Virus record (IMG/VR): IMGVR_UViG_3300017917_002466 | Span: 62,001-126,000 of that record | Direction: 5' to 3' (one strand) | DNA length: 64,000 bases | In this document: piece by piece, positions 10,726 through 42,513 of the stretch | Position numbering within the stretch: position 1 is the first letter of the stretch | Layout of the letters: each line of letters begins with the position of its first letter | Translations under genes and position numbers: made by a program | Notes under the pieces: model-generated | What the model was told of the DNA's origin: nothing | The model's input: the letters and a program-made list of their open reading frames with translations, nothing else | Database searches by the model: none

Positions 10726-13700
10726 ATGAATCAATACACTTATAAAGAAGCCTACGATCAAACCTTGAGTTATTTTAACGGAGACGAACTTGCAACCGGA
10801 GTGTTTATTGAAAAATATGCACTTAGAGACAAAGAAGGAAATTTACTTGAAAGCAATCCTTCAATGATGTTTAGAAGAATAGCCAAAGAATTTGCGAGAA
10901 TAGAAAAAGGCAAATTTAAGAACCCACTCACCGAAGACCAAATCTTTGAACTTTTTGACCATTTTAAGTACATAGTTCCAGCAGGAAGCCCTCTTTTTGG
11001 TATTGGAAATGAATTCCAAATTATCAGTCTCTCCAATTGCTTCTTCTGTGAAATCCCAGAAGATAGCTACTCGGCTATTCTAAAGGTTGACGAACAGTTC
11101 GTCAATATCTGCAAACGTAGAGGTGGAGTAGGTGTTTGTTTGGACAAATTAAGACCAGAAGGGGTTCAGACCAACAACGCTGCTAGAACCTCCACTGGCA
11201 TAATACCTTTCTTAGAAAGATACTCCAATACAATCAGAGAAGTAGGTCAAGAAGGAAGAAGGGGAGCAGGAATCGCCATTCTTTCAGTTCATCACCCACA
11301 GATTTTAGATTTCGCTACTGTAAAGAACGATGATAAAAAAGTTACTGGACTTAACATTTCTGTTAAGCTTTCAAATGAATTTATGGAAGCTGTTGATAAA
11401 GATACTGAGTATGAAATTCGTTTCCCAGTTGATTACAAAGAAAGGAATGTAAAGCCAATAATCTCCAAAATGGTTAAAGCCAGAGAAGTTTGGAATACCA
11501 TCATTAAGTCGGCTCACAATAGAGGAGAACCGGGTTTGCTTATGTGGGATAATATCACAAGAGAAACTCCAGCCGATGCATACGAAGAATTTGCGAGCAA
11601 GGGGTGTAACCCTTCATTAAGAAAGGGAACCTTAGTTTTAACTAAAGAAGGCCCACGAGAAATTCAAGACTTAGAAAATAAATTTTTTGAAGTATATAAT
11701 TTAGAAGGTAAATATTCTAAAGCAAAATGCAAACTTTCTGGTAAAAATCAAATACTATATGAAGTTTGTTTGAATACTGGAATGATTTATCATTGTACGG
11801 CCGAACATAGATGGGCTACTCGCCGAGGAGAATTAACAACTTTACAAATTCGACCGGGTGATAAATTACCAACTCTTCGAAAAAAAGATATTTTCAATGG
11901 AAATTTGGGCGATTTTGATGATGGATTTTTAATTGGTTGGTTTATTGGGGATGGCTGGAAAGTTATTAGAAAAGATACTAATAGAAATCAATATGGTTTA
12001 ATTTGTTCAGAAAAAGATTTTAATTCCGGTATTGGAAAAGAATTAATAAGAATTCTTCAAGAAAAAACTGGATATAAAGGAGAATTTCATAAAAGGGAAA
12101 GAAAAAATTCAACGTGGTATGAATTAAATACTTGTAATTTAAAAATAGATAATTATTTCAACAAATTTTATAATCCTGATAAAATTAATGGAATTAATAA
12201 AAAGTTAATTTGTGAATCTTCTGAAATTTTTATTAAAGGCTTAATTAATGGTTATTTGTCTTCTGATGGAAACATTTATAAAAATAAAAGAATTTCTTTT
12301 TCATCTTCAATTAAATATAAAAAACTTTTATTAGATATTTCTGAAATTTTGGGATTTTTTGGAATTAAAACAACATTAAAATATATTCCACCAAGAAAAA
12401 TAATTTTTCCAAACGGTAAAGATTATAACAAAAAATATGAAAGATATGATTTGGTTATTAATGACTTATATTCTAAAAAACATTTTGCTACTTTATTTCA
12501 AAGCAAAATTGATTATAAAAATCAAAAATTAGAGGACATTAAAAAATTAAACTATAAACAAAACGTAAAACCAATAGACTATATTTTGGTTAAAAAAGTA
12601 ACTAAAACATCTGTACAAGAAAATGTTTGGGATATAGAAGTATTTGATAAAGATAATTGTTTTTCATTAAGCCATTGTATAACTCATAATTGTAGCGAGT
12701 TGAATCTTAGCGTACTTGATAGTTGTAGGTTAATATCTTTGAACCTTTTCTCATTCGTGGATAATCCTTTTACAACCAAAGCAAAGTTCAATTATGAAAA
12801 GCTTTCAGAAGTTACAATGATAGCACAGAGACTTATGGACGATTTGGTTGATCTTGAGTCTGAAAAGGTTCAGAAAATAATTGATAAAGTTAAGAAAGAC
12901 CCAGAGCCAATGAAAATCAAGAAAGATGAGATTGAACTTTGGGAAACTATAAAAAAGAATAACGATGAAGGTCGCAGAACAGGATTAGGATTTATGGGGT
13001 TGGCAGACGTGTTTGCCGCTTTAGGAATGAAGTATGGAGAAGAAGATTCTATTAGAAAAGTTGAAAAAATCTCCAAAACTATCAAACTTGCAGCATATCG
13101 TTCTTCAGTTGAAATGGCTAAGGAACTTGGTCATTTTAAGTGTTATGATGCAAAGAAAGAAGAAAATCATCCCTTTATCAAGAGAATTGCAAAAGAAGAC
13201 GAACATCTTTACAAAGATATGAGAAAGTATGGAAGAAGAAATGTTGCTCTATTAACAGTTCCTCCTACGGGTAGTATTTCAATAGAAGCCGGAGTTTCTT
13301 CTGGTATTGAGCCTTTGTTTGAAATTTCTTATACTCGCAGAAAGAAAATAAATGACTCTACTAATGAAAGATCAGATTTTACAGATGTAAGTGGAGATAA
13401 GTGGCAAGAGTTTAAAGTATTCCATAATAGAGTAAAGGAATGGATGGAAGTTACTGGAGAAAAGAATGCTGAGAAGTCTCCTTGGTTTGGTTCTTGTGCC
13501 AATGACATAAACTGGGTAAACAGAGTAAAGCTTCAAGGAACTATTCAAAAGCATATCTGTCACTCCATTTCATCAACTATCAATCTTCCGAAAGATGTTT
13601 CAGTTGAATCAGTCGCAAAGATTTATGAAACTGCTTGGAAAGAAGGTTTGAAAGGAATTACTGTCTATCGTGATGGTTGTAGGTCTGGTGTGCTTGTTAA

Positions 13701-14229
13701 GAAAGACGATTGTAATAGGGAAGCTCCTAAGCGTCCAAAAGAACTTCCTTGTGAAATATATCATACCAATATCACAAAGAAGCTTGACAAAGTTAGAACT
13801 TTCAAATATATGGTTATGATTGGCATTATGGAAGACGCGCCATACGAAATCTTTGCTATTGAAAACGGCCAGTACAAACATACCAAAGGAAAGGTTATCA
13901 AGATTAAGAGAGGTCATTATGACTTGGAGTTTGAAAATGGTGAGAAAGTAGAAAATTTTACCAAGGATACAACTGATAATGAAGACTCATTAACAAGAAT
14001 GGTTTCTACATCTTTGAGACATAAAGTTCCAATTCACTTTATTTGTGAGCAGCTAAACAAAGTTGAAGGAGAAATGTTCTGTTTTTCCAAGTCTATCGCA
14101 AGAGCCTTAAAGAAGTACATTAAAGATGGAACTAAGTCAGGAGAAGATTGTCAGAATTGTGGAGCAAGATTAGTTTATGAAAACGGATGCTTCACCTGTA
14201 AATCTTGTGGATTTTCAAAATGTGGTTGA
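10726..14229 (+). CDS. nrdJ: Class II (adenosylcobalamin) ribonucleotide reductase with intein
   Basis: LSNCF, GGVG, GEPG, NP/CSE split by intein, RRTGLG, VPPTGSIS, GITVYRDG, C-terminal Cys pairs. Confidence 0.9.
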   Translation: MNQYTYKEAYDQTLSYFNGDELATGVFIEKYALRDKEGNLLESNPSMMFRRIAKEFARIEKGKFKNPLTEDQIFELFDHFKYIVPAGSPLFGIGNEFQIISLSNCFFCEIPEDSYSAILKVDEQFVNICKRRGGVGVCLDKLRPEGVQTNNAARTSTGIIPFLERYSNTIREVGQEGRRGAGIAILSVHHPQILDFATVKNDDKKVTGLNISVKLSNEFMEAVDKDTEYEIRFPVDYKERNVKPIISKMVKAREVWNTIIKSAHNRGEPGLLMWDNITRETPADAYEEFASKGCNPSLRKGTLVLTKEGPREIQDLENKFFEVYNLEGKYSKAKCKLSGKNQILYEVCLNTGMIYHCTAEHRWATRRGELTTLQIRPGDKLPTLRKKDIFNGNLGDFDDGFLIGWFIGDGWKVIRKDTNRNQYGLICSEKDFNSGIGKELIRILQEKTGYKGEFHKRERKNSTWYELNTCNLKIDNYFNKFYNPDKINGINKKLICESSEIFIKGLINGYLSSDGNIYKNKRISFSSSIKYKKLLLDISEILGFFGIKTTLKYIPPRKIIFPNGKDYNKKYERYDLVINDLYSKKHFATLFQSKIDYKNQKLEDIKKLNYKQNVKPIDYILVKKVTKTSVQENVWDIEVFDKDNCFSLSHCITHNCSELNLSVLDSCRLISLNLFSFVDNPFTTKAKFNYEKLSEVTMIAQRLMDDLVDLESEKVQKIIDKVKKDPEPMKIKKDEIELWETIKKNNDEGRRTGLGFMGLADVFAALGMKYGEEDSIRKVEKISKTIKLAAYRSSVEMAKELGHFKCYDAKKEENHPFIKRIAKEDEHLYKDMRKYGRRNVALLTVPPTGSISIEAGVSSGIEPLFEISYTRRKKINDSTNERSDFTDVSGDKWQEFKVFHNRVKEWMEVTGEKNAEKSPWFGSCANDINWVNRVKLQGTIQKHICHSISSTINLPKDVSVESVAKIYETAWKEGLKGITVYRDGCRSGVLVKKDDCNREAPKRPKELPCEIYHTNITKKLDKVRTFKYMVMIGIMEDAPYEIFAIENGQYKHTKGKVIKIKRGHYDLEFENGEKVENFTKDTTDNEDSLTRMVSTSLRHKVPIHFICEQLNKVEGEMFCFSKSIARALKKYIKDGTKSGEDCQNCGARLVYENGCFTCKSCGFSKCG
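11614..12690 (+). mobile_element. LAGLIDADG intein (359 aa, Ser1) in the RNR active-site NPC motif
   Basis: CNP|SLRKGTLVLT..GFLIGWFIGDG..GYLSSDG..VWDIEV..ITHN|CSE. Confidence 0.9.
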
Positions 14230-22393: not shown

Positions 22394-23098
22394 ATGAAAA
22401 AAGTCGTGTTGATGAGCGGAAAAATCCACTGTGGAAAAAATCAATTCGCCCAGTTTCTCAAAGAAGAATTCAGGAATAAAGGTCTAAAGGTTTCCGAAGA
22501 CCTTTTTGCACGTTCTCTTAAAGACGGATGCAAAGAAGACTTTCGTAAGTTGACTAATGTCTTAGAAAGCATCTGTGAAGAAGTTAAATCCAAGATTGGA
22601 CTTTTTGTTGACCAAAGAGCCCATATGTTGAGCCCAAATATTGTCAAGGATATTGACAATTCTCTAGATAAGCTCAAGATTAAAGACGAGAACTGGTACG
22701 AAGACAAGACCGATATTACTCGTAATATTCTTCAGCTTTATGGTACTGAAATTTTCCGTAAAAGAGTAGACGAGAATTGGTGGGTCAAGCAGGTAAGGAA
22801 CCGATGTATCGCCTCAAACGACGATGTTATCATTGTCACAGACTGTAGGTTCCCAAATGAAATTACCGAAATGTTGTGTGATGATTATGAAACTGTAGTC
22901 ATTAGAATTAATAGAGATATAAATACTAATGAACAGATATCATCTCACGATTCTGAAACAGCCCTTAATAATTGGGAAATGTGGAACTATATTATTAACA
23001 ATAATGGTAATTTACAAACTTTAAAAGAATCAGCAAAAACAGTATGTGAAGATATACTACAAGAAAAATATGATTCTAACTACTTATTTAATAATTAA
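22394..23098 (+). CDS. Deoxynucleoside monophosphate kinase (gp1-like)
   Basis: SGKIHCGKN, RNILQLYGTE, TDCRFPNE, HDSE. Confidence 0.85.
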   Translation: MKKVVLMSGKIHCGKNQFAQFLKEEFRNKGLKVSEDLFARSLKDGCKEDFRKLTNVLESICEEVKSKIGLFVDQRAHMLSPNIVKDIDNSLDKLKIKDENWYEDKTDITRNILQLYGTEIFRKRVDENWWVKQVRNRCIASNDDVIIVTDCRFPNEITEMLCDDYETVVIRINRDINTNEQISSHDSETALNNWEMWNYIINNNGNLQTLKESAKTVCEDILQEKYDSNYLFNN

Positions 23099-23771
23099 TA
23101 TTAATGGAAGAACTTTTTCTTATTGGAAAAATAAAGGTTATATTATTCCAACATATAAAGATAAATTTGGACGAATAAGAGTTCAAAGAAATACTAAAAT
23201 AGAAGTCAAAGTTTCTGATTTGCCAAAAGGAAGTCATATTAAAGTTCTTTGTAAGTGTGATAATTGTGGAAAAGAAAGAATATTAAAATTTGCACAATAT
23301 AATCCAATATGTAAAAGTTGTAATTTACATTCTTATCAAAAAGACTTAAATCCAAATTGGAAAAATGGTTTTCCGAAATGTAAAATTTGTGGTTCAATAT
23401 TAAAAGACCGAAGGTCAAGTTTTTGTGTTGATTGTCTTTGGAAACAACAAGTTGGTTCAAAGCATCCAAAATATAACCACAAATTAACTGAAAAAGAAAG
23501 AAAATTATCTCATAATCGTGGTCTTAATTCAAAAAATTATTTTTGGAAAAAAGAAGTTCTACAAAGAGATAACCATACTTGTCAAAAATGTAGTTCAAAA
23601 GAATATCTTCAAGTTCATCATATTGACAATTTTAACGAAAATATTCAAAGACGTTATGATATAAATAATGGTATAACGCTTTGTAAGAAATGTCATAAAT
23701 TAATTCATAAAATTTTTGGAAATAAAACCAATACAAACCACTTAGAAAAATTTCTTTCAAAAATAATATAA
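23070..23771 (+). CDS. HNH homing endonuclease
   Basis: RDNHTCQKC..VHHI..NGITLCKKCHKLIH. Confidence 0.88.
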   Translation: MILTTYLIININGRTFSYWKNKGYIIPTYKDKFGRIRVQRNTKIEVKVSDLPKGSHIKVLCKCDNCGKERILKFAQYNPICKSCNLHSYQKDLNPNWKNGFPKCKICGSILKDRRSSFCVDCLWKQQVGSKHPKYNHKLTEKERKLSHNRGLNSKNYFWKKEVLQRDNHTCQKCSSKEYLQVHHIDNFNENIQRRYDINNGITLCKKCHKLIHKIFGNKTNTNHLEKFLSKII

Positions 23772-24548: not shown

Positions 24549-24761
24549 ATGTCAATCTTCAATGATATTGAAAAGGATATAATGTACGAAGTACTTCAAA
24601 AATGTGCTATAGATTATGCAAAGATTCACGGAGAAGATGAAAAAAATGAAGATGTAATCCTTATTAATAAGTTTCTTGAAAATATTACAAGATTTGACCT
24701 TGTAGAAGCCATTGTAGACAAACTAAAAGAAAAAGGTTACCAAATTTCTCAAAAGACTTGA
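24549..24761 (+). CDS. Hypothetical protein
   Basis: ORF in operon. Confidence 0.55.
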   Translation: MSIFNDIEKDIMYEVLQKCAIDYAKIHGEDEKNEDVILINKFLENITRFDLVEAIVDKLKEKGYQISQKT

Positions 24762-24907
24762 CAGACTTAGGAAAATGATATATATTAGATGAATATAGAT
24801 TTAAAAAAAATACCTATTAAGCTTCCAATCTTGAAGATAGATGGAGAAGAAATCAAAATTTTGGGCTTATTTAAAATCAAATATAAGAAAAAATTTTTAA
24901 AAAAACC

Positions 24908-24936
24908 TTGACAAACTCGTGAAAATATGTTATATT
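24908..24936 (+). promoter_or_regulatory. sigma70-type promoter of the tRNA array
   Basis: TTGACA-N17-TATATT; a similar promoter lies at 24758-24786. Confidence 0.75.
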
Positions 24937-24991
24937 AAGAAGGTCGATGAAAAAAGGTCAGAAACTATAAATAGTAATAGAAAGAAATAAT

Positions 24992-25068
24992 AGCGGGAGG
25001 CTAGGCCCAGTGGTCTGGAAAGTCTCATAAGCTTTCAACCTACGTGCAACTCGTAGTCCACGCAACCA
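24992..25068 (+). tRNA. tRNA-Met(CAT), atypical acceptor with 1:72 mismatch and bulge
   Basis: aaagt-ctCATaa-gcttt; T arm; CCA. Confidence 0.7.
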
Positions 25069-25084
25069 AATAAAGGAAAACATT

Positions 25085-25210
25085 ATGAAAAACATTATCT
25101 GTAAACAGCAACTCTCAAAGCATGAAGCAAGTTATATTGCCATGCCTGAATTATGCTCTTGGTTTAATGCCAATAATACAGATAGACCAGGAGCAAAAAG
25201 GGAAACCTGA
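25085..25210 (+). CDS. 41-aa putative leader peptide
   Basis: AAGGA SD; MKNIICKQQLSKHEASYIAMPELCSWFNANNTDRPGAKRET; ends 24 nt before a terminator. Confidence 0.55.
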   Translation: MKNIICKQQLSKHEASYIAMPELCSWFNANNTDRPGAKRET

Positions 25211-25233
25211 CTAATAATTTATCTTTAGGATAA

Positions 25234-25273
25234 AAAGGGAGTTGGGTAAAAACAACCGACTCCCTTTCTTTTT
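25234..25273 (+). terminator. Rho-independent terminator/attenuator before the tRNA array
   Basis: AAAGGGAGTTGG/CCGACTCCCTTT hairpin plus T tract. Confidence 0.8.
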
Positions 25274-25281
25274 GTACTGAT

Positions 25282-25293
25282 GATCTTTGACAA
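25282..25293 (+). promoter_or_regulatory. boxA-like antitermination sequence
   Basis: GATCTTTGACAA resembles rrn boxA GCTCTTTAACAA; no -10 at promoter spacing. Confidence 0.55.
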
Positions 25294-25394
25294 TTCGGGA
25301 ATTGATAAGCACTTTGTTGTGAAAAACACAACTAAAATGTAATTCTAAGCGACACCTGCTTTAAGTGGTGTGACAATATGAGAGAATATATTTT

Positions 25395-25468
25395 GCCCCC
25401 AAAGCATTAAGGTGATGCACTTGGCTCTTAACCAAGAGAAGAAGGTTCAATACCTTTTGGGGGTACCA
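25395..25468 (+). tRNA. tRNA-Lys(CTT)
   Basis: cttgg-ctCTTaa-ccaag; CCA. Confidence 0.9.
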
Positions 25469-25476
25469 AATTTTTT

Positions 25477-25562
25477 GGCGCGGATGGTAAGTGGTTGAAA
25501 TCAAACGGCTGTAACCCGTTCGCCTCACGGCTATGTAGGTTAAAATCCTACCCGCGTCACCA
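25477..25562 (+). tRNA. tRNA-Tyr(GTA)
   Basis: aacgg-ctGTAac-ccgtt; long variable arm; CCA. Confidence 0.9.
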
Positions 25563-25570
25563 AATTATAT

Positions 25571-25644
25571 AGGCTATTGGTGTAATAGAAACACATTTCT
25601 CTCCAAAAGAAAAGACAAGGGAGCATAACCTTTATAGCCTGCCA
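25571..25644 (+). tRNA. tRNA-Trp(CCA)
   Basis: tttct-ctCCAaa-agaaa; CCA. Confidence 0.85.
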
Positions 25645-25651
25645 ATTTTTT

Positions 25652-25726
25652 GCTTCCAAGGTGTTAAGGTTGCATTTCCGTCTTTTAAGCGGTAGGGTCT
25701 TGGTTCAAGTCCAAGTGGAAGCACCA
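25652..25726 (+). tRNA. tRNA-Lys(TTT)
   Basis: ctTTTaa loop; CCA. Confidence 0.88.
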
Positions 25727-25733
25727 AGTTTGT

Positions 25734-25810
25734 GGAACTGTAGCATAATTGGCTAGTGCACCACATTGTCAATGTGGGTTATGCGGGTTCAAATCCCGTC
25801 GGTTCCGCCA
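25734..25810 (+). tRNA. tRNA-Asp(GTC)
   Basis: ccaca-ttGTCaa-tgtgg; CCA. Confidence 0.9.
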
Positions 25811-25818
25811 TAAGTTAC

Positions 25819-25902
25819 ACCCTCGTCGCCTAGTGGTAATGGCACCAGACTTTTAATCTGACGAGCGCAAGCTCTTCACAGGTTCAAATCCTGTCGGGGG
25901 TA
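25819..25902 (+). tRNA. tRNA-Lys(TTT) with long variable arm
   Basis: caga-ctTTTaa-tctg; gagc-gcaa-gctc extra arm; no encoded CCA. Confidence 0.75.
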
Positions 25903-25914
25903 CTAAAAAGTTAT

Positions 25915-26001
25915 TCCAGAGTATGCAAACTGACAGGGCGGCTTGACTGTTAATCAAGTGTGGGAAACCATCTGTAGGTTTAAATCCTACCTCTGGAGCC
26001 A
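25915..26001 (+). tRNA. tRNA-Asn(GTT) with long variable arm
   Basis: cttga-ctGTTaa-tcaag; tgg-gaaa-cca extra arm; G73; CCA. Confidence 0.78.
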
Positions 26002-26036
26002 AATATTAACATTTACGGAATAATAAAAAGATATAA

Positions 26037-26112
26037 GGGTCTGTAGCTACAATGATAGAGCGCGAGCCCGTTAAGCTCGGAGATGTCAGTTTAACTCTGA
26101 CCGGACCCTCCA
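26037..26112 (+). tRNA. tRNA-Asn(GTT)
   Basis: cgagc-ccGTTaa-gctcg; CCA. Confidence 0.8.
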
Positions 26113-26118
26113 AATCAA

Positions 26119-26193
26119 GCAGTGTAGGCAGATCGGCTATGCGTCACTCTTCCAAAGTGAATCTGGTGAGTTCAACTCTCGCACACTGCACCA
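26119..26193 (+). tRNA. tRNA-Gly(TCC)
   Basis: tcact-ctTCCaa-agtga; CCA. Confidence 0.88.
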
Positions 26194-26200
26194 AAATTTC

Positions 26201-26274
26201 GGGGGTTTCTTCTAGTGGAAAGAAAACTGTCTCTGAAGCAGATAACGGTGGTTCAATTCCATCAACCCTCGCCA
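26201..26274 (+). tRNA. tRNA-Gln(CTG)
   Basis: ctCTGaa loop; CCA. Confidence 0.85.
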
Positions 26275-26292
26275 AAAAGTTTTTAGAAGAAA

Positions 26293-26454
26293 GCTGGGAA
26301 ACAGAGGTTCAAATCCTCTACTGAAGTTGATTTATAGAAGTATGCTGAATTTACTGGCAGGTAAATATAAGCAGAAAATATAAATCCTTTACAAATCAAA
26401 GCCTGCCAGCCGAGATAAGTAAAGTTCAGTTCATCTAGTGGGAGAATACCTGGC
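26293..26454 (+). ncRNA. Circularly permuted tRNA-like RNA with long internal hairpin
   Basis: T arm first, D arm last; ACTGAA/TTCAGT and GCTGGG/CCTGGC helices close a cloverleaf. Confidence 0.5.
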
Positions 26455-26461
26455 GTATTAT

Positions 26462-26536
26462 GGTGGTATTGGTGTAGTAGAAGCATCTGATCCTGTGAAG
26501 ATCAAGGGTTCGGAGCATATCCGAAATATCACCCCA
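26462..26536 (+). tRNA. tRNA-His(GTG)
   Basis: tgatc-ctGTGaa-gatca; G-1, C73; CCA. Confidence 0.88.
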
Positions 26537-26544
26537 AAATTTAT

Positions 26545-26633
26545 TAGGAAGTAGGCCCGTAATTGGTAGCGGTCTTGTTCTGGAAACAAGTGGCAATATG
26601 CTCCTGGGAGTTCGAGTCTCCCCTTCCTAACCA
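26545..26633 (+). tRNA. Class II tRNA, Ser(GGA) or Pro(TGG), anticodon register ambiguous
   Basis: cttgt-tctggaa-acaag; long variable arm; CCA. Confidence 0.65.
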
Positions 26634-26641
26634 AGAATTAT

Positions 26642-26716
26642 GCCGCCGTAGCCAAGTAGAAGGTGATGCCTCTGCAAAAGGTAATCTTTGGGGCGCAACT
26701 CCCCACGGTGGCTCCA
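26642..26716 (+). tRNA. tRNA-Cys(GCA)
   Basis: ctGCAaa loop; U73; CCA. Confidence 0.88.
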
Positions 26717-26793
26717 AATTATTTTCACCAATCTGTGATTTTTTATCATCAAAAGATATAAATACCTCTGATGGGTAAACCAAAAGAGGATTT

Positions 26794-27423
26794 ATGGACT
26801 TAGAAAATAAAAGATACCAATATCTAAAAGACTGGAGAAAAAGAACTAAGCAAAGAATGGTTGATGCTTTTGATGGAAAATGTGGAATTTGTGGATATAA
26901 TAAATGTAAAGAAGCATTAGAATTTCATCATATTGATCCAACAAAAAAAGATTTTACTATTTCAAAAAACAAATTTAACAATTGGGAAAAATTAGTTAAA
27001 GAATTAAAAAAATGTATCTGTATTTGTTCAAATTGTCATAAAGAAATTCATAATGAAATAATTAAAATTCCAATTGATGTTAAAAAATTTAATGAAAATT
27101 ATAATGAATATAGAGTAGAAAAAGAAATTAATTATATTGAATGTCCAGTTTGTAAAAAATTAATGGAAGATACACGTAATTATTGTTCGATGGATTGTTT
27201 TAATAAGATTAGAGAAAAAGTAGATTGGAAAATATTTGATTTAAATAAAATGATTTTAACATCATCTATTTTAGAAATTTCTAAAATAGTTGGAGTTTCA
27301 AATACATCTATTCAAAAAAGACTAAAAAAATTAAATCTTCCTTTTAAAAGAAAAGATATTTTAAAATATAAAATGGATGCTGGCGTGGCTGGTAGTGACG
27401 GTTTGTCTGATAAACAAATGTAG
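26794..27423 (+). CDS. HNH endonuclease inside the tRNA array
   Basis: CGICGY..LEFHHIDP..CSNCHKEIH; late promoter and SD hairpin upstream. Confidence 0.87.
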   Translation: MDLENKRYQYLKDWRKRTKQRMVDAFDGKCGICGYNKCKEALEFHHIDPTKKDFTISKNKFNNWEKLVKELKKCICICSNCHKEIHNEIIKIPIDVKKFNENYNEYRVEKEINYIECPVCKKLMEDTRNYCSMDCFNKIREKVDWKIFDLNKMILTSSILEISKIVGVSNTSIQKRLKKLNLPFKRKDILKYKMDAGVAGSDGLSDKQM

Positions 27424-27451
27424 CGAAGTTCGATTCTTCGGGCATCCACCA
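27375..27451 (+). tRNA. tRNA-Ile(GAT)
   Basis: tttgt-ctGATaa-acaaa; CCA; overlaps the HNH 3' end. Confidence 0.82.
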
Positions 27452-29167: not shown

Positions 29168-29242
29168 ACCAAGTGGCAGGTCAGCATCTGAGGACGTCTC
29201 ATAAGCGTTCTGAATAGGGGTCAGCACCCTAACTTGGTACCA
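29168..29242 (+). tRNA. tRNA-Met(CAT)
   Basis: gacgt-ctCATaa-gcgtt; CCA. Confidence 0.8.
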
Positions 29243-29564: not shown

Positions 29565-29664
29565 AAATCCATTACAAGGCGCGTGTCGGTGGTTCGATTC
29601 CATCCGCTCCCACATTACTGGAGTGTAGCTCAGTTGGTAGAGCAGCAAAAAAAAGTCCATCCTG
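29545..29664 (+). ncRNA. Y-RNA-like element 2 enclosing a circularly permuted tRNA-Val (YrlA-like)
   Basis: AAGGATGGGTTCAGCAA..TCCATCCTG around T arm, loop-closed acceptor stem and D arm. Confidence 0.85.
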
Positions 29665-32337: not shown

Positions 32338-32422
32338 AGGAGCCAAGGCAACTGGTTGTGGCCGCCAGTCTTATAAGCTGGGAAACTAAACGAGGTGGGT
32401 TCAATTCCCACGGCTCCTACCA
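32338..32422 (+). tRNA. tRNA-Ile(TAT)
   Basis: ccagt-ctTATaa-gctgg; enlarged variable region; CCA. Confidence 0.8.
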
Positions 32423-42134: not shown

Positions 42135-42152
42135 GATGTTTTCAAAAAGACC

Positions 42153-42181
42153 TTGACAAACTTGTGAGAAGATATTATATT
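42153..42181 (+). promoter_or_regulatory. sigma70-type promoter within the ncRNA array
   Basis: TTGACA-N17-TATATT. Confidence 0.7.
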
Positions 42182-42229
42182 AAGAAAGAGGGCAGAAAAT
42201 TTCGGTAAAATGATATATACATATTCGGG

Positions 42230-42321
42230 AAGGATAGATTCAGCAAACTAAAAGGAAAATAGCTCGCAAGAGCTTATTTGGTTCAAATCCAAAAACGTCG
42301 CAAGACGAAAAACTATCCTGT
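42230..42321 (+). ncRNA. Y-RNA-like element 7
   Basis: AAGGATAGATTCAGCAA..CTATCCTGT; two GCAA tetraloops flanking a tttgg-TTCAAAT-ccaaa T-arm mimic. Confidence 0.78.
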
Positions 42322-42341
42322 GACCTACAAGATAATAAATG

Positions 42342-42401
42342 AAGGGTGAGTTCAGCAACTCAAAAACAAACAACTCATAATTGTTAAAAAGTTCACCCTG
42401 T
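42342..42401 (+). ncRNA. Y-RNA-like element 8
   Basis: AAGGGTGAGTTCAGCAA..TTCACCCTGT; aacaa-ctCATaa-ttgtt anticodon mimic. Confidence 0.78.
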
Positions 42402-42434
42402 TTTTTCTACAGTTCGGATTGAAAGAAAGTTTTG

Positions 42435-42486
42435 AAGGTTGGATTCCGCAATTAAAATCCATAATTAGGAAAAAAGACCAACCTGT
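42435..42486 (+). ncRNA. Y-RNA-like element 9
   Basis: AAGGTTGGATTCCGCAA..CCAACCTGT. Confidence 0.75.
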
Positions 42487-42513
42487 AACCTTTAATGTTT
42501 AGGAGGCCCGCAA

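What the first reader, a model, noticed from the sequence alone, without database searches (positions are those of the whole stretch)
25070..25293. Leader peptide, terminator and boxA gate between the first tRNA and the rest of the array
Seen: after the promoter and tRNA-Met come an SD and a 41-codon ORF, then a strong intrinsic terminator (25234-25273), then a boxA-like GATCTTTGACAA, then the bulk of the tRNAs. The last codons of the ORF contain AAAAAGGGA (25195-25203), identical to the terminator 5' arm region (25232-25240), so they can compete for the same 3' arm. Inference: ribosome-coupled attenuation, in which tRNA-array transcription reads through depending on translation of a peptide that samples many amino acids, i.e. 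a sensor of host tRNA depletion.
Basis: partly seen in the sequence, partly recalled or inferred. Interest (0 to 1): 0.7.

Follow-up and report, generated by a model that had tools for sequence, protein, structure and literature searches.

The report
All-amino-acid leader peptide gating phage tRNAs
A large T4-like phage and 13 uncultured relatives place, ahead of their tRNA gene array, a translated mini-gene containing nearly all 20 amino acids, joined to a terminator/anti-terminator switch and a boxA-like site. This looks like a sensor that turns on phage tRNA production when any tRNA runs short.

Summary
One exception: two tRNA finders do not call the "tRNA-Met" in this window, though its counterparts in relatives are called tRNA-Met.

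I found 13 homologous leaders in uncultured phages. All share the same layout: SD plus a 39-45 codon ORF, an intrinsic terminator 23-34 nt after the stop, an invariant boxA-like block, a small hairpin, then tRNA-Lys/Tyr/Trp and the rest.

Three results change the picture:
- **Antiterminator.** It is the stretch at the stop codon (ACCUGACU), which pairs with the terminator's 5' arm in every relative and co-varies in L011 and L007.
- **Peptide.** Peptide sequences diverge to 16-30% identity, yet every leader has 19 or 20 different amino acids. Chance is about 3-6% for 19 or more and 0.3-0.8% for 20. Three members found after I made this prediction all had 20.
- **boxA.** The site matches the NusB-binding B. 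subtilis rrn boxA at 12 of 13 positions.

Best reading: a trp/his-type ribosome-mediated attenuator with a generalist leader, followed by a processivity site. It probably gates only the first 13-tRNA block. There are no RNA data, so the mechanism is inferred.

The parts
24758..24786 (+). Upstream sigma-70-type promoter-like site (TTGACA-17-TATATT)
   Evidence: it lies at the 3' end of the preceding gene
24908..24936 (+). Sigma-70-type promoter-like site with extended -10, heading the unit
   Evidence: An equivalent promoter stands upstream of the leader in the relatives where that stretch was read (window, L003, L004, L006, L007, L008, L011, L013, L020). An 88%-identical copy lies at window 42145-42186.
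24966..24973 (+). TATAAATA, a T4-late-promoter-like motif between the early promoter and the tRNA-like element
   Evidence: (C)TATAAATA(G) is kept at the same place in relatives. Promoter function is inferred.
24993..25068 (+). Degenerate tRNA-Met-like cloverleaf (CAU anticodon loop, ...ACCA end)
   Evidence: MFE cloverleaf. Not called by ARAGORN or Rfam. Homologs are called tRNA-Met in L003, L004, L007, L012 and L035. The T-arm co-varies between window and L020.
25073..25077 (+). Shine-Dalgarno AAGGA, 7 nt before the ATG
   Evidence: A purine-rich AGG/GAGG/AAGGA core sits 7-9 nt upstream of the ATG in 12 of 14 leaders.
25085..25210 (+). Leader ORF: 41 codons, 19 distinct amino acids (Val missing), 31 distinct codons, stop UGA
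   Evidence: The ORF is kept open at 39-45 codons in all 14 relatives despite 16-92% identity.
25160..25189 (+). Candidate hairpin inside the ORF (UGGUUU 25160-25165 with AGACCA 25184-25189); possible pause element
   Evidence: RNAalifold. 90% of cells paired, one compensatory change in L006, but not above shuffles: inconclusive.
25195..25203 (+).
   Evidence: Not conserved as such in relatives.
25205..25212 (+). Antiterminator 5' strand ACCUGACU, spanning the UGA stop; pairs with 25240-25247
   Evidence: Invariant CUGA core. It is conserved even where it lies after a UAA stop (L003, L004, L017).
25234..25273 (+). Intrinsic terminator: 5' arm 25234-25245, loop, 3' arm 25256-25267, U-tract to 25273
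   Evidence: 91% of cells paired and 5 pairs with compensatory changes across 14 sequences.
25280..25292 (+). boxA-like AUGAUCUUUGACA
   Evidence: 12 of 13 match to the B. subtilis rrn boxA consensus that binds NusB (PMC13753749). TCTTTGACA is invariant in 14 sequences. Predicted unpaired.
25293..25315 (+). Conserved spacer block (WTTYGGGAA..TGAC.TAAGCAC)
   Evidence: The TTGACA-to-TAAGCA spacing varies from 13 to 17 nt, so it does not behave as a -35/-10 pair.
25316..25332 (+). Small hairpin after boxA (GUUGUG-AAAAA-CACAAC; GUUGC-GAAA-GCAAC in most relatives)
   Evidence: 94% paired, with a compensatory G-C to A-U change in two sequences.
25395..26716 (+). First tRNA block with no promoter-like site of its own: Lys, Tyr, Trp, Lys, Asp, Lys, Asn, Asn, Gly, Gln, His, Pro, Cys
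   Evidence: No + strand promoter-like or TATAAATA site between 24974 and 26722.

Best explanation
This is a ribosome-mediated transcription attenuator of the trp/his type, placed in front of the first block of a phage tRNA array and followed by an rrn-like boxA processivity site.

**Proposed sequence of events**
1. Transcripts start at the early promoters, and possibly at a TATAAATA late-type promoter. They carry a tRNA-Met-like element and then a translated leader of about 41 codons.
2. The RNA at the stop codon (ACCUGACU) can pair with the 5' arm of the terminator that lies 23 nt further on.
3. If a ribosome runs through the leader to the stop codon, it covers that stretch. The terminator then forms and transcription ends before the tRNAs.
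4. If the ribosome is held up anywhere earlier, or is absent, the stop-codon stretch pairs with the 5' arm, the terminator cannot form, and RNA polymerase reads on.
5. Polymerases that pass transcribe boxA and the small hairpin. These would load Nus factors for efficient, Rho-resistant synthesis of the long untranslated tRNA block.

Because the leader holds nearly every amino acid and many synonymous codons, shortage of almost any charged tRNA would raise read-through. That would make phage tRNA supply self-adjusting.

**Shown here:** the anatomy, its conservation, the alternative pairing and the amino-acid completeness.
**Inferred:** that translation sets the choice, the direction of the response, Nus binding, and any link to host tRNA depletion.
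For: 1. **Conserved module.** Fourteen contigs share the module: promoter (not read in every contig) and tRNA-Met-like element (seen in 12; absent in L008), SD plus ORF of 39-45 codons, terminator, boxA-like block, hairpin (absent in L028, L035 and L007), then tRNAs.
2. **Fixed geometry.** The stop codon lies within or 0-8 nt before the ACCUGAC stretch, and the terminator 5' arm starts 23-34 nt after the stop. This matches my recollection of the E. coli trp leader layout.
3. **Alternative pairing.** The stop region pairs with the 5' arm in 86% of cells, against <= 39% when partners are slid. L011 changed all three strands together (CUGAAUC / GAUUCAG / CUGAAUC). L007 has a different sequence that still forms a 12-bp duplex of -17.2 kcal/mol, matched by 4 of 3957 random 22-mers. 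In 8 of the 9 leaders where the terminator arms were correctly located, the MFE of the nascent RNA before the 3' arm exists contains this helix; the exception is the window, where it is the local optimum once only the stop-proximal RNA is folded.
4. **Not a coding constraint.** The stretch is kept where it is non-coding, after UAA stops in L003, L004 and L017.
5. **Translation is selected.** The frame stays open in all lineages, though about 7% of random codons would be stops. Most codon differences are non-synonymous: 1084 against 122. So the act of translation is conserved, not a folded product.
6. **Amino-acid completeness.** Distinct amino acids number 19 in 5 leaders and 20 in 9. Three independent nulls give P(>=19) = 3-6% and P(20) = 0.3-0.8%. 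Three members found afterwards by criteria blind to the peptide all have 20. The count stays 19-20 without the last five codons. Codon diversity is also high: 31 of 41 here, P about 0.01.
7. **Matching array.** The array encodes tRNAs for all 20 amino acids.
8. **No alternative promoter.** No promoter-like site lies between the terminator and the first 13 tRNAs.
9. **boxA.** 12 of 13 match to the B. subtilis rrn boxA shown to bind NusB, invariant in all 14 sequences.
10. **Context.** The phage also carries RtcB tRNA ligase at 48222-49541, so tRNA damage is a pressure on it.
Against: - There are no transcript or ribosome data. The sample is a pond metagenome and the only 'RNA' run holds just fragments from relatives.
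- Covariation for the antiterminator is thin, because the element is so conserved: two double changes, and 10-11 of 500 shuffles reach the observed values.
- In this window the helix is the weakest of the family, at -9.2 kcal/mol; 12% of random 22-mers do as well.
- The window's 5' arm can also pair with CAACUCUC early in the ORF, at -12.1 kcal/mol.
- No convincing pause hairpin or trp-like '1:2' pairing was found. An untranslated leader would therefore read through by default, unlike trp.
- The host is unknown. If it is a Firmicute, as the boxA type hints, transcription and translation may not be coupled there (PMC13753749 text).
- The terminator is thermodynamically favoured over the alternative fold, -30.9 against -22.5 kcal/mol here. 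The switch would have to be kinetic.
Confidence: 0.6

Rival explanations
1. This is an ordinary small gene with its own terminator. The ORF encodes a functional micro-protein, the hairpin simply ends that early transcript, and the tRNAs are made by constitutive leak-through. The stop-region complementarity has no regulatory role.
For: The C-terminal half of the peptide has a recurring W-F/L-N ... T-D-R-P-E/G pattern. Intrinsic terminators are rarely 100% efficient. The antiterminator helix in this window is no better than 12% of random 22-mers.
Against: Peptide identity falls to 16-30% between lineages and changes are mostly non-synonymous. No Pfam or PHROG family matches. Amino-acid completeness in all 14 is not expected of a 40-residue protein. 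The ACCUGAC stretch is conserved where it is non-coding and co-varies with the terminator. The conserved codons W-F and R-P may reflect an RNA hairpin, given the L006 compensatory change.
Confidence: 0.12
2. The terminator/antiterminator choice is set by a trans-acting factor, with translation only incidental. The factor could be a phage or host protein, or an RNA such as uncharged tRNA.
For: The alternative pairing exists whatever the trigger. A tRNA-like element is co-transcribed just upstream. If the host resembles B. subtilis, factor-dependent attenuation is the more common style there (my own knowledge).
Against: This does not explain the conserved SD, ATG, open frame and stop position, nor the amino-acid completeness. 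No T-box or other Rfam family matches 24930-25400 even at E <= 10. The spacer between the two strands is not conserved.
Confidence: 0.1
3. One reading: the AAAAAGGGA copy in the last codons competes with the identical 5'-arm sequence for the terminator's 3' arm, and this competition is the switch.
For: The 9-mer occurs only twice in 64 kb, and both copies are here, 37 nt apart. A constrained fold of this window uses it as an outer helix with the 3' arm/U-tract, at -22.5 kcal/mol. Relatives have a purine-rich GAAGGAG at the same place that can pair with their pyrimidine-rich 3' arm.
Against: The repeat is not conserved. L011 and L013 have no such copy and L020 only a partial one. A distant mimic of the 5' arm must compete with an adjacent 5' arm for a 3' arm that emerges last, which is kinetically unfavourable (inference). 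The conserved, co-varying element is the stop-codon stretch.
Confidence: 0.06
4. There is no gate. The conserved TTGACA at 25287-25292 is the -35 box of a separate promoter for the tRNA block, and the terminator only insulates it from upstream transcription.
For: TTGACA is this phage's -35 consensus, and CTTGACAA occurs in dozens of its promoters. TCTTTGACA occurs 7 times on the + strand against 1.8 expected. The block is invariant in relatives.
Against: No TATAAT-like -10 follows. The only conserved candidate, TAAGCA, lacks the key final T, and its distance from TTGACA varies from 13 to 17 nt among relatives: 13 in this window against 16-18 in every strict-motif promoter of this phage (17 in nearly all). 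This would not explain the leader ORF or its properties.
Confidence: 0.1

Closest known systems
Leader-peptide transcription attenuators of amino-acid operons (trp, his, leu, thr, ilv, pheA in enterobacteria)
   Same: A short SD-led ORF precedes an intrinsic terminator. An upstream strand at or just after the leader stop codon can pair with the terminator's 5' arm. A terminating ribosome would mask that strand. The leader's codons mirror what the operon supplies.
   Different: The regulated genes are tRNAs, not biosynthetic enzymes, and the system is in a phage. The leader is not enriched in one amino acid but contains 19-20 of them. No supported 1:2/pause hairpin was found, so the untranslated state would read through rather than terminate.
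rrn / lambda nut antitermination sites (boxA with NusB-S10; boxB hairpin)
   Same: The 13-mer matches the B. subtilis rrn boxA at 12 of 13 positions and the gamma-proteobacterial GYTCTTTAANA at 9 of 11 here, 10 of 11 in relatives with Y at position 2. It lies in the leader of a stable-RNA operon and is followed by a small GNRA-type hairpin.
   Different: It sits after a regulated terminator. The hairpin follows boxA by about 23 nt, unlike the hairpin-then-boxA order of rrn leaders and the tight boxA-boxB spacing of nut (my own knowledge). Nus binding is untested and the host is unknown.
TnaC and other arrest-peptide leaders
   Same: A short leader with W-F-N and D-R-P motifs recalls TnaC (W-F-N-I-D ... 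D-H-R-P, from my own knowledge). L008 even reads W-F-N-I-D. The stop codon is UGA.
   Different: The W-to-P spacing is 8-9 residues, not 12. Pro is followed by 4-7 more codons rather than the stop. W and P are not invariant (S in L017, G in L007). The terminator is intrinsic, not Rho-dependent. The conserved codons can instead be explained by RNA pairing.
tRNA gene clusters of T4-like and other large phages
   Same: Long arrays of tRNAs are interspersed with small ORFs and homing endonucleases in a phage with T4-type replication genes.
   Different: I know of no described leader-peptide attenuator or boxA in front of a phage tRNA cluster. Full-text searches found none, and GenBank phages have no homolog of this leader.

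Membership tests
Ribosome-mediated (leader-peptide) transcription attenuator | Short ORF with ribosome-binding site in the leader transcript | tested here: met
   SD AAGGA plus ATG, 41 codons. Kept open at 39-45 codons in 14 relatives.
Ribosome-mediated (leader-peptide) transcription attenuator | Intrinsic terminator between the leader ORF and the regulated genes | tested here: met
   Hairpin plus U-tract at 25234-25273. 91% paired with 5 compensatory pairs.
Ribosome-mediated (leader-peptide) transcription attenuator | Mutually exclusive antiterminator pairing that uses one terminator arm | tested here: met
   The stop-codon stretch pairs with the 5' arm: 86% paired against <= 39% slid, with co-variation in L011 and L007. 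Weak in the window itself.
Ribosome-mediated (leader-peptide) transcription attenuator | Stop codon placed so that a terminating ribosome masks the antiterminator strand | tested here: met
   The stop lies inside the strand or 0-8 nt upstream of it in all 14.
Ribosome-mediated (leader-peptide) transcription attenuator | Regulatory codons that correspond to the product of the operon | tested here: met
   The leader has 19-20 of the 20 amino acids and the array has tRNAs for all 20. This is a generalised form, not enrichment of one codon.
Ribosome-mediated (leader-peptide) transcription attenuator | Pause hairpin / region 1:2 that synchronises ribosome and polymerase | tested here: inconclusive
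   The candidate UGGUUU:AGACCA is 90% paired but not above shuffles.
Ribosome-mediated (leader-peptide) transcription attenuator | Read-through depends on leader translation and tRNA charging | not testable with these tools
   No RNA runs hold this phage.
boxA (Nus-factor loading site) | Match to the boxA consensus | tested here: met
   AUGAUCUUUGACA against the B. subtilis AUGAUCUUUGAAA is 12 of 13. Against GYTCTTTAANA it is 9-10 of 11. Not significant in one genome.
boxA (Nus-factor loading site) | Conserved in the transcribed leader of a stable-RNA operon | tested here: met
   TCTTTGACA is invariant in 14 leaders while the flanks vary. Predicted single-stranded.
boxA (Nus-factor loading site) | Binds NusB-S10 and confers termination resistance; same motif in the host's rrn leaders | not testable with these tools
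   The host is unknown. The nearest cultured phages are only about 34% identical in the replicative helicase.
tRNA gene (the 'first tRNA', 24993-25068) | Recognised by tRNA covariance or heuristic models | tested here: not met
   No ARAGORN call, default or relaxed, and no Rfam tRNA hit at E <= 10. Homologs in relatives are called.
TnaC-type arrest peptide | Invariant W and P at fixed spacing, with P as the last sense codon | tested here: not met
   The spacing is 8-9 residues, P is followed by 4-7 codons, and W or P is replaced in L017 and L007.
T-box or other curated cis-regulatory RNA | Match to an Rfam model | tested here: not met
   No relevant hit in 24930-25400 at E <= 10.

The most novel reading that the evidence does not exclude
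The leader is a 'pangram' sensor, a roughly 41-codon test message holding every amino acid and many isoacceptor codons. It lets the phage read the state of the whole aminoacyl-tRNA pool. It switches on the first tRNA block (Lys, Tyr, Trp, Asp, Asn, Gln, His and others, the classic targets of anticodon nucleases) when the host or its defences deplete any tRNA. boxA then makes the read-through polymerases processive. This would be the first attenuator known to control tRNA genes and the first generalist leader peptide.
Probability: 0.4. Interest if true: 0.9.

Novelty: new variant of a known kind. Interest (0 to 1): 0.8.

Why it matters
Phage tRNA arrays are widely discussed as a way to sustain translation when host tRNAs are degraded or cleaved by defence nucleases. 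How their expression is controlled is essentially unknown.

A leader peptide that contains all amino acids, coupled to a terminator switch, would be a simple feedback device: tRNAs are made when translation falters at any codon. It would extend classical attenuation from one amino acid to the whole decoding system and to stable-RNA genes.

It would also give a compact natural reporter of global tRNA charging. The module is only about 250 nt and can be tested directly with reporters. The amino-acid-completeness criterion gives a new search key for similar sensors elsewhere.

Tried and rejected
**Searches that found nothing useful**
- Relatives via the upstream 120-aa protein: none.
- The 41-aa peptide and the peptide alignment could not seed locus scans.
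- GenBank phages hold no homolog of the peptide or of the terminator-boxA DNA.
- The first boxA pattern scan gave one false hit in a coding region, L015.
- The attenuator pattern scan gave five unrelated hits (L024-L027, L029) and one true new member, L028.
- Sequencing runs: only DNA runs of a pond metagenome hold the window. One 'metatranscriptomic' run holds fragments of relatives' tRNA-like elements and nothing across the leader.
- Rfam search of the second promoter copy's leader (42150-42520) found nothing.
- Literature searches found no precedent.

**Ideas rejected**
- TnaC-like arrest peptide: the spacing and invariance tests failed.
- A promoter at TTGACA 25287: the spacing is variable and there is no -10.
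- T-box: no Rfam hit.
- pyrBI-type coupling: the ORF ends 23-34 nt before the hairpin instead of running into it.
- Enrichment of K, Q, H, N, Y in the first 20 residues (6-10 against about 5 expected) is seen in most leaders but not in L007, which has 1. I do not rely on it.
- Leader codon usage is ordinary, at the 36th percentile, so rare codons are not the sensing principle.

**Not run**
- Structure and complex predictions, because they would not bear on the claim.
Full report
**Setting.** The window is bases 62001-126000 of a complete 253,664-bp IMG/VR phage genome with terminal repeats, 33% G+C. It has T4-type replication genes: UvsX, a gp41-like helicase, gp44 clamp loader, RNR with an intein, and dNMP kinase. 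It also has an RtcB tRNA ligase. Its nearest cultured relatives are only about 34% identical in the helicase. The sample is a pond metagenome and the host is unknown. The phage uses many strong TTGACA-17-TATAWT promoters and T4-late-like TATAAATA motifs.

**Checking the observation.** All listed elements are present:
- promoter at 24908-24936;
- SD AAGGA at 25073-25077;
- 41-codon ORF at 25085-25210;
- hairpin plus U-tract at 25234-25273, about -18.7 kcal/mol, with segment z = -3.9;
- GATCTTTGACAA at 25282-25293;
- AAAAAGGGA at 25195-25203 and 25232-25240, the only two copies in 64 kb.

The 'tRNA-Met' at 24993-25068 is the weak point. Neither ARAGORN (default or relaxed) nor the Rfam tRNA model (E <= 10) calls it. 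It does fold as a cloverleaf with a CUCAUAA loop. Its homologs in relatives are called tRNA-Met. It is best described as a degenerate tRNA-Met-like element.

**Relatives.**
- The dNMP kinase gene about 2 kb upstream led to L003, L004, L006, L007 and L008, and later to L033 and L035 through an alignment.
- The peptide itself matched small proteins that led to L011, L012 and L013.
- A pattern from the post-boxA hairpin found L017, L020, L021 and L023 in metagenomes.
- A pattern for the switch found L028.

After removing duplicates there are 14 leaders. All show the same order: promoter (seen wherever the upstream stretch was read); a tRNA-Met-like element (seen in 12; absent in L008); SD plus ORF of 39-45 codons; terminator; an invariant TCTTTGACA block; a small hairpin (absent in L028, L035 and L007); then tRNA-Lys/Tyr/Trp.

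**The switch.** In every relative a terminator hairpin of about -19 to -22 kcal/mol (where scored) with a U-tract starts 23-34 nt after the stop. Across 14 sequences it is 91% paired, with five pairs showing compensatory changes.

What is conserved is ACCUGAC(UC) at the stop codon. UGA lies inside it in 10 leaders. In L003, L004/L012 and L017 a UAA stop lies 0-8 nt before it, so there it is non-coding yet unchanged.

This stretch is complementary to the terminator's 5' arm (GAGUCAGGU) and therefore identical to the 3' arm. The pairing holds in 86% of cells, against <= 39% when the partner columns are slid. Three lineages are informative:
- L011 changed all three strands together.
- L007 has a different sequence in both strands yet forms a 12-bp duplex of -17.2 kcal/mol, equalled by 4 of 3957 random 22-mers from its locus.
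- The window's own 5' arm changed C to U and A to G. These are exactly the changes that keep pairing with an unchanged stop region through G-U pairs.

When the RNA is folded up to the loop, before the 3' arm exists, the MFE contains this helix in 8 of the 9 leaders where the arms were correctly located. In the window it is the local optimum at -13.1 kcal/mol.

The support has limits. Covariation events are few (10-11 of 500 shuffles reach the observed scores). The window's helix is weak on its own: -9.2 kcal/mol, with 12% of random 22-mers as good.

**The leader peptide.** Identity between lineages falls to 16-30%. Codon differences are mostly non-synonymous, 1084 against 122, with only a mild third-position excess. 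So no folded protein is being conserved, yet the frame, its length and its end point are.

Every leader contains 19 (5 leaders) or 20 (9 leaders) different amino acids in 39-45 residues. Three nulls were used: 41-residue windows of this phage's proteins, all six-frame ORFs of 39-45 codons in the genome, and random ORFs of genomic composition. They give P(>=19) = 3-6% and P(20) = 0.3-0.8%.

I made this observation on 11 leaders. The three members found afterwards by criteria blind to the peptide (L028, L033, L035) all have 20. Dropping the last five codons, where a stalled ribosome would still mask the switch, leaves 19-20.

Codon diversity is also high: 31 of 41 in the window, P about 0.01. 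Both synonymous codons are used for Lys, Gln, Asn, Ile, Cys, Arg, Thr, Pro, Ala and Leu, and three codons for Ser. Codon rarity is ordinary. With relaxed detection the array encodes tRNAs for all 20 amino acids.

The recurrent W-F-N ... D-R-P pattern resembles TnaC but fails its spacing and invariance tests. It may instead reflect an RNA hairpin, UGGUUU:AGACCA, which has one compensatory change in L006. That hairpin is not statistically supported.

**boxA and what follows.** AUGAUCUUUGACA at 25280-25292 matches at 12 of 13 positions the B. subtilis rrn boxA consensus AUGAUCUUUGAAA, which binds NusB (PMC13753749). It matches at 9-10 of 11 the gamma-proteobacterial consensus GYTCTTTAANA (PMC5725501).

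One such match per genome is expected by chance. The evidence is therefore its invariance in 14 leaders amid variable flanks, its unpaired state and its position at the head of a stable-RNA operon.

Reading it as a -35 box is less likely. The only conserved downstream candidate (TAAGCA) lacks the key T, and its spacing varies from 13 to 17 nt. A hairpin follows: GUUGC-GAAA-GCAAC in most, GUUGUG-AAAAA-CACAAC here. It is 94% paired with one compensatory pair type.

**Scope of the gate.** No promoter-like or TATAAATA site lies between 24974 and 26722 on the + strand. The first block of 13 tRNAs (25395-26716) therefore depends on read-through. Later blocks have candidate promoters of their own: 30201 and 32666, with TATAAATA at 26757, 27629, 28243 and 32427.

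**Mechanism proposed.** A ribosome that reaches the stop codon covers 25195-25212. The 5' arm then pairs with the 3' arm and transcription stops at about 25273. A ribosome delayed at any earlier codon, or no ribosome, leaves ACCUGACU free to take the 5' arm, and polymerase continues. The polymerase then transcribes boxA and is made processive.

The geometry is the same as in the trp leader (my own knowledge). UGA followed by C is a slow termination context in E. coli (my own knowledge), which would prolong masking.

- Shown: the anatomy, its conservation, the alternative pairing and the amino-acid completeness.
- Inferred: dependence on translation, the direction of the response, Nus-factor binding, and the biological trigger.

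**Novelty.** Attenuation by leader peptides and boxA sites are both known kinds. Three things appear undescribed: their use in front of a phage tRNA array, a leader that is complete in amino acids rather than enriched in one, and the order gate-then-boxA.

I file it as a new variant of a known kind. My confidence in the attenuator reading is about 0.6.

Noticed in passing
window 48222-49541 (-) and 46207-46280 (-): There is an RtcB tRNA-splicing/repair ligase gene (Pfam E = 7e-59). Close by is a tRNA with a CUA anticodon, which would read UAG; ARAGORN labels it 'Pyl'. I did not examine whether UAG is recoded in this phage.
   Followed up: no
window 25571-25644, 26037-26112, 26548-26633, 26642-26716, 29168-29242: Default ARAGORN misses five tRNAs (Trp, Asn, Pro, Cys, Met). 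The relaxed run or Rfam finds them. With them the array covers all 20 amino acids.
   Followed up: partly
window 42145-42513: A second copy of the leader's promoter (88% identical over 42 nt) heads a roughly 330-nt untranslated, structured stretch. That stretch has two GAKUCAGCAAMCU-AAAA repeats and a terminator-like hairpin. It lies in front of a DUF2828/DUF7788 protein at 42514-43986. A similar GAGUUCAGCAAACUAAAA motif lies upstream of the tRNA-Met in L007. There is no Rfam hit.
   Followed up: partly
window 29581-29646: A weak match to the Y-RNA-like family YrlA (33.8 bits, E = 2.5e-4, below the gathering score of 69) lies inside the tRNA array.
   Followed up: no
window 25340-25394; L006 2600-2700, L013 2200-2330, L020, L023: A conserved long-range stem (GACACC ... 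GGUGU) followed by GAGAG sits directly 5' of the first array tRNA. Relatives carry insertions of up to about 100 nt inside it. It may be a processing element or a small RNA.
   Followed up: no
window 24789-24911: A small ORF of 40 codons ends inside the 24908 promoter. Its C-terminal part (..KILGLFKIK.KKK..) is recognisable in L003, L006, L013 and L020.
   Followed up: no
window 26794-27423 and 23046-23771: There are HNH homing-endonuclease genes. One sits inside the tRNA array, and its 3' end overlaps tRNA-Ile at 27375-27451. Its DNA is about 80% identical to HNH genes of Yersinia, Klebsiella and Lak phages.
   Followed up: no
window 10726-14229: The ribonucleotide reductase large subunit is interrupted by an intein with a LAGLIDADG domain.
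   Followed up: no
genome 127-143 kb (- strand), including window 63171 and 63762: There is a dense run of more than 30 near-identical GGGCTTGACAAA-N-TGTATATT promoters, a few hundred bases apart. This looks like an early region of many small genes, each with its own promoter.
   Followed up: no
window 32338-32422: A tRNA-Ile carries a UAU anticodon, alongside the CAU-anticodon elements. This is an unusual way of reading AUA.
   Followed up: no
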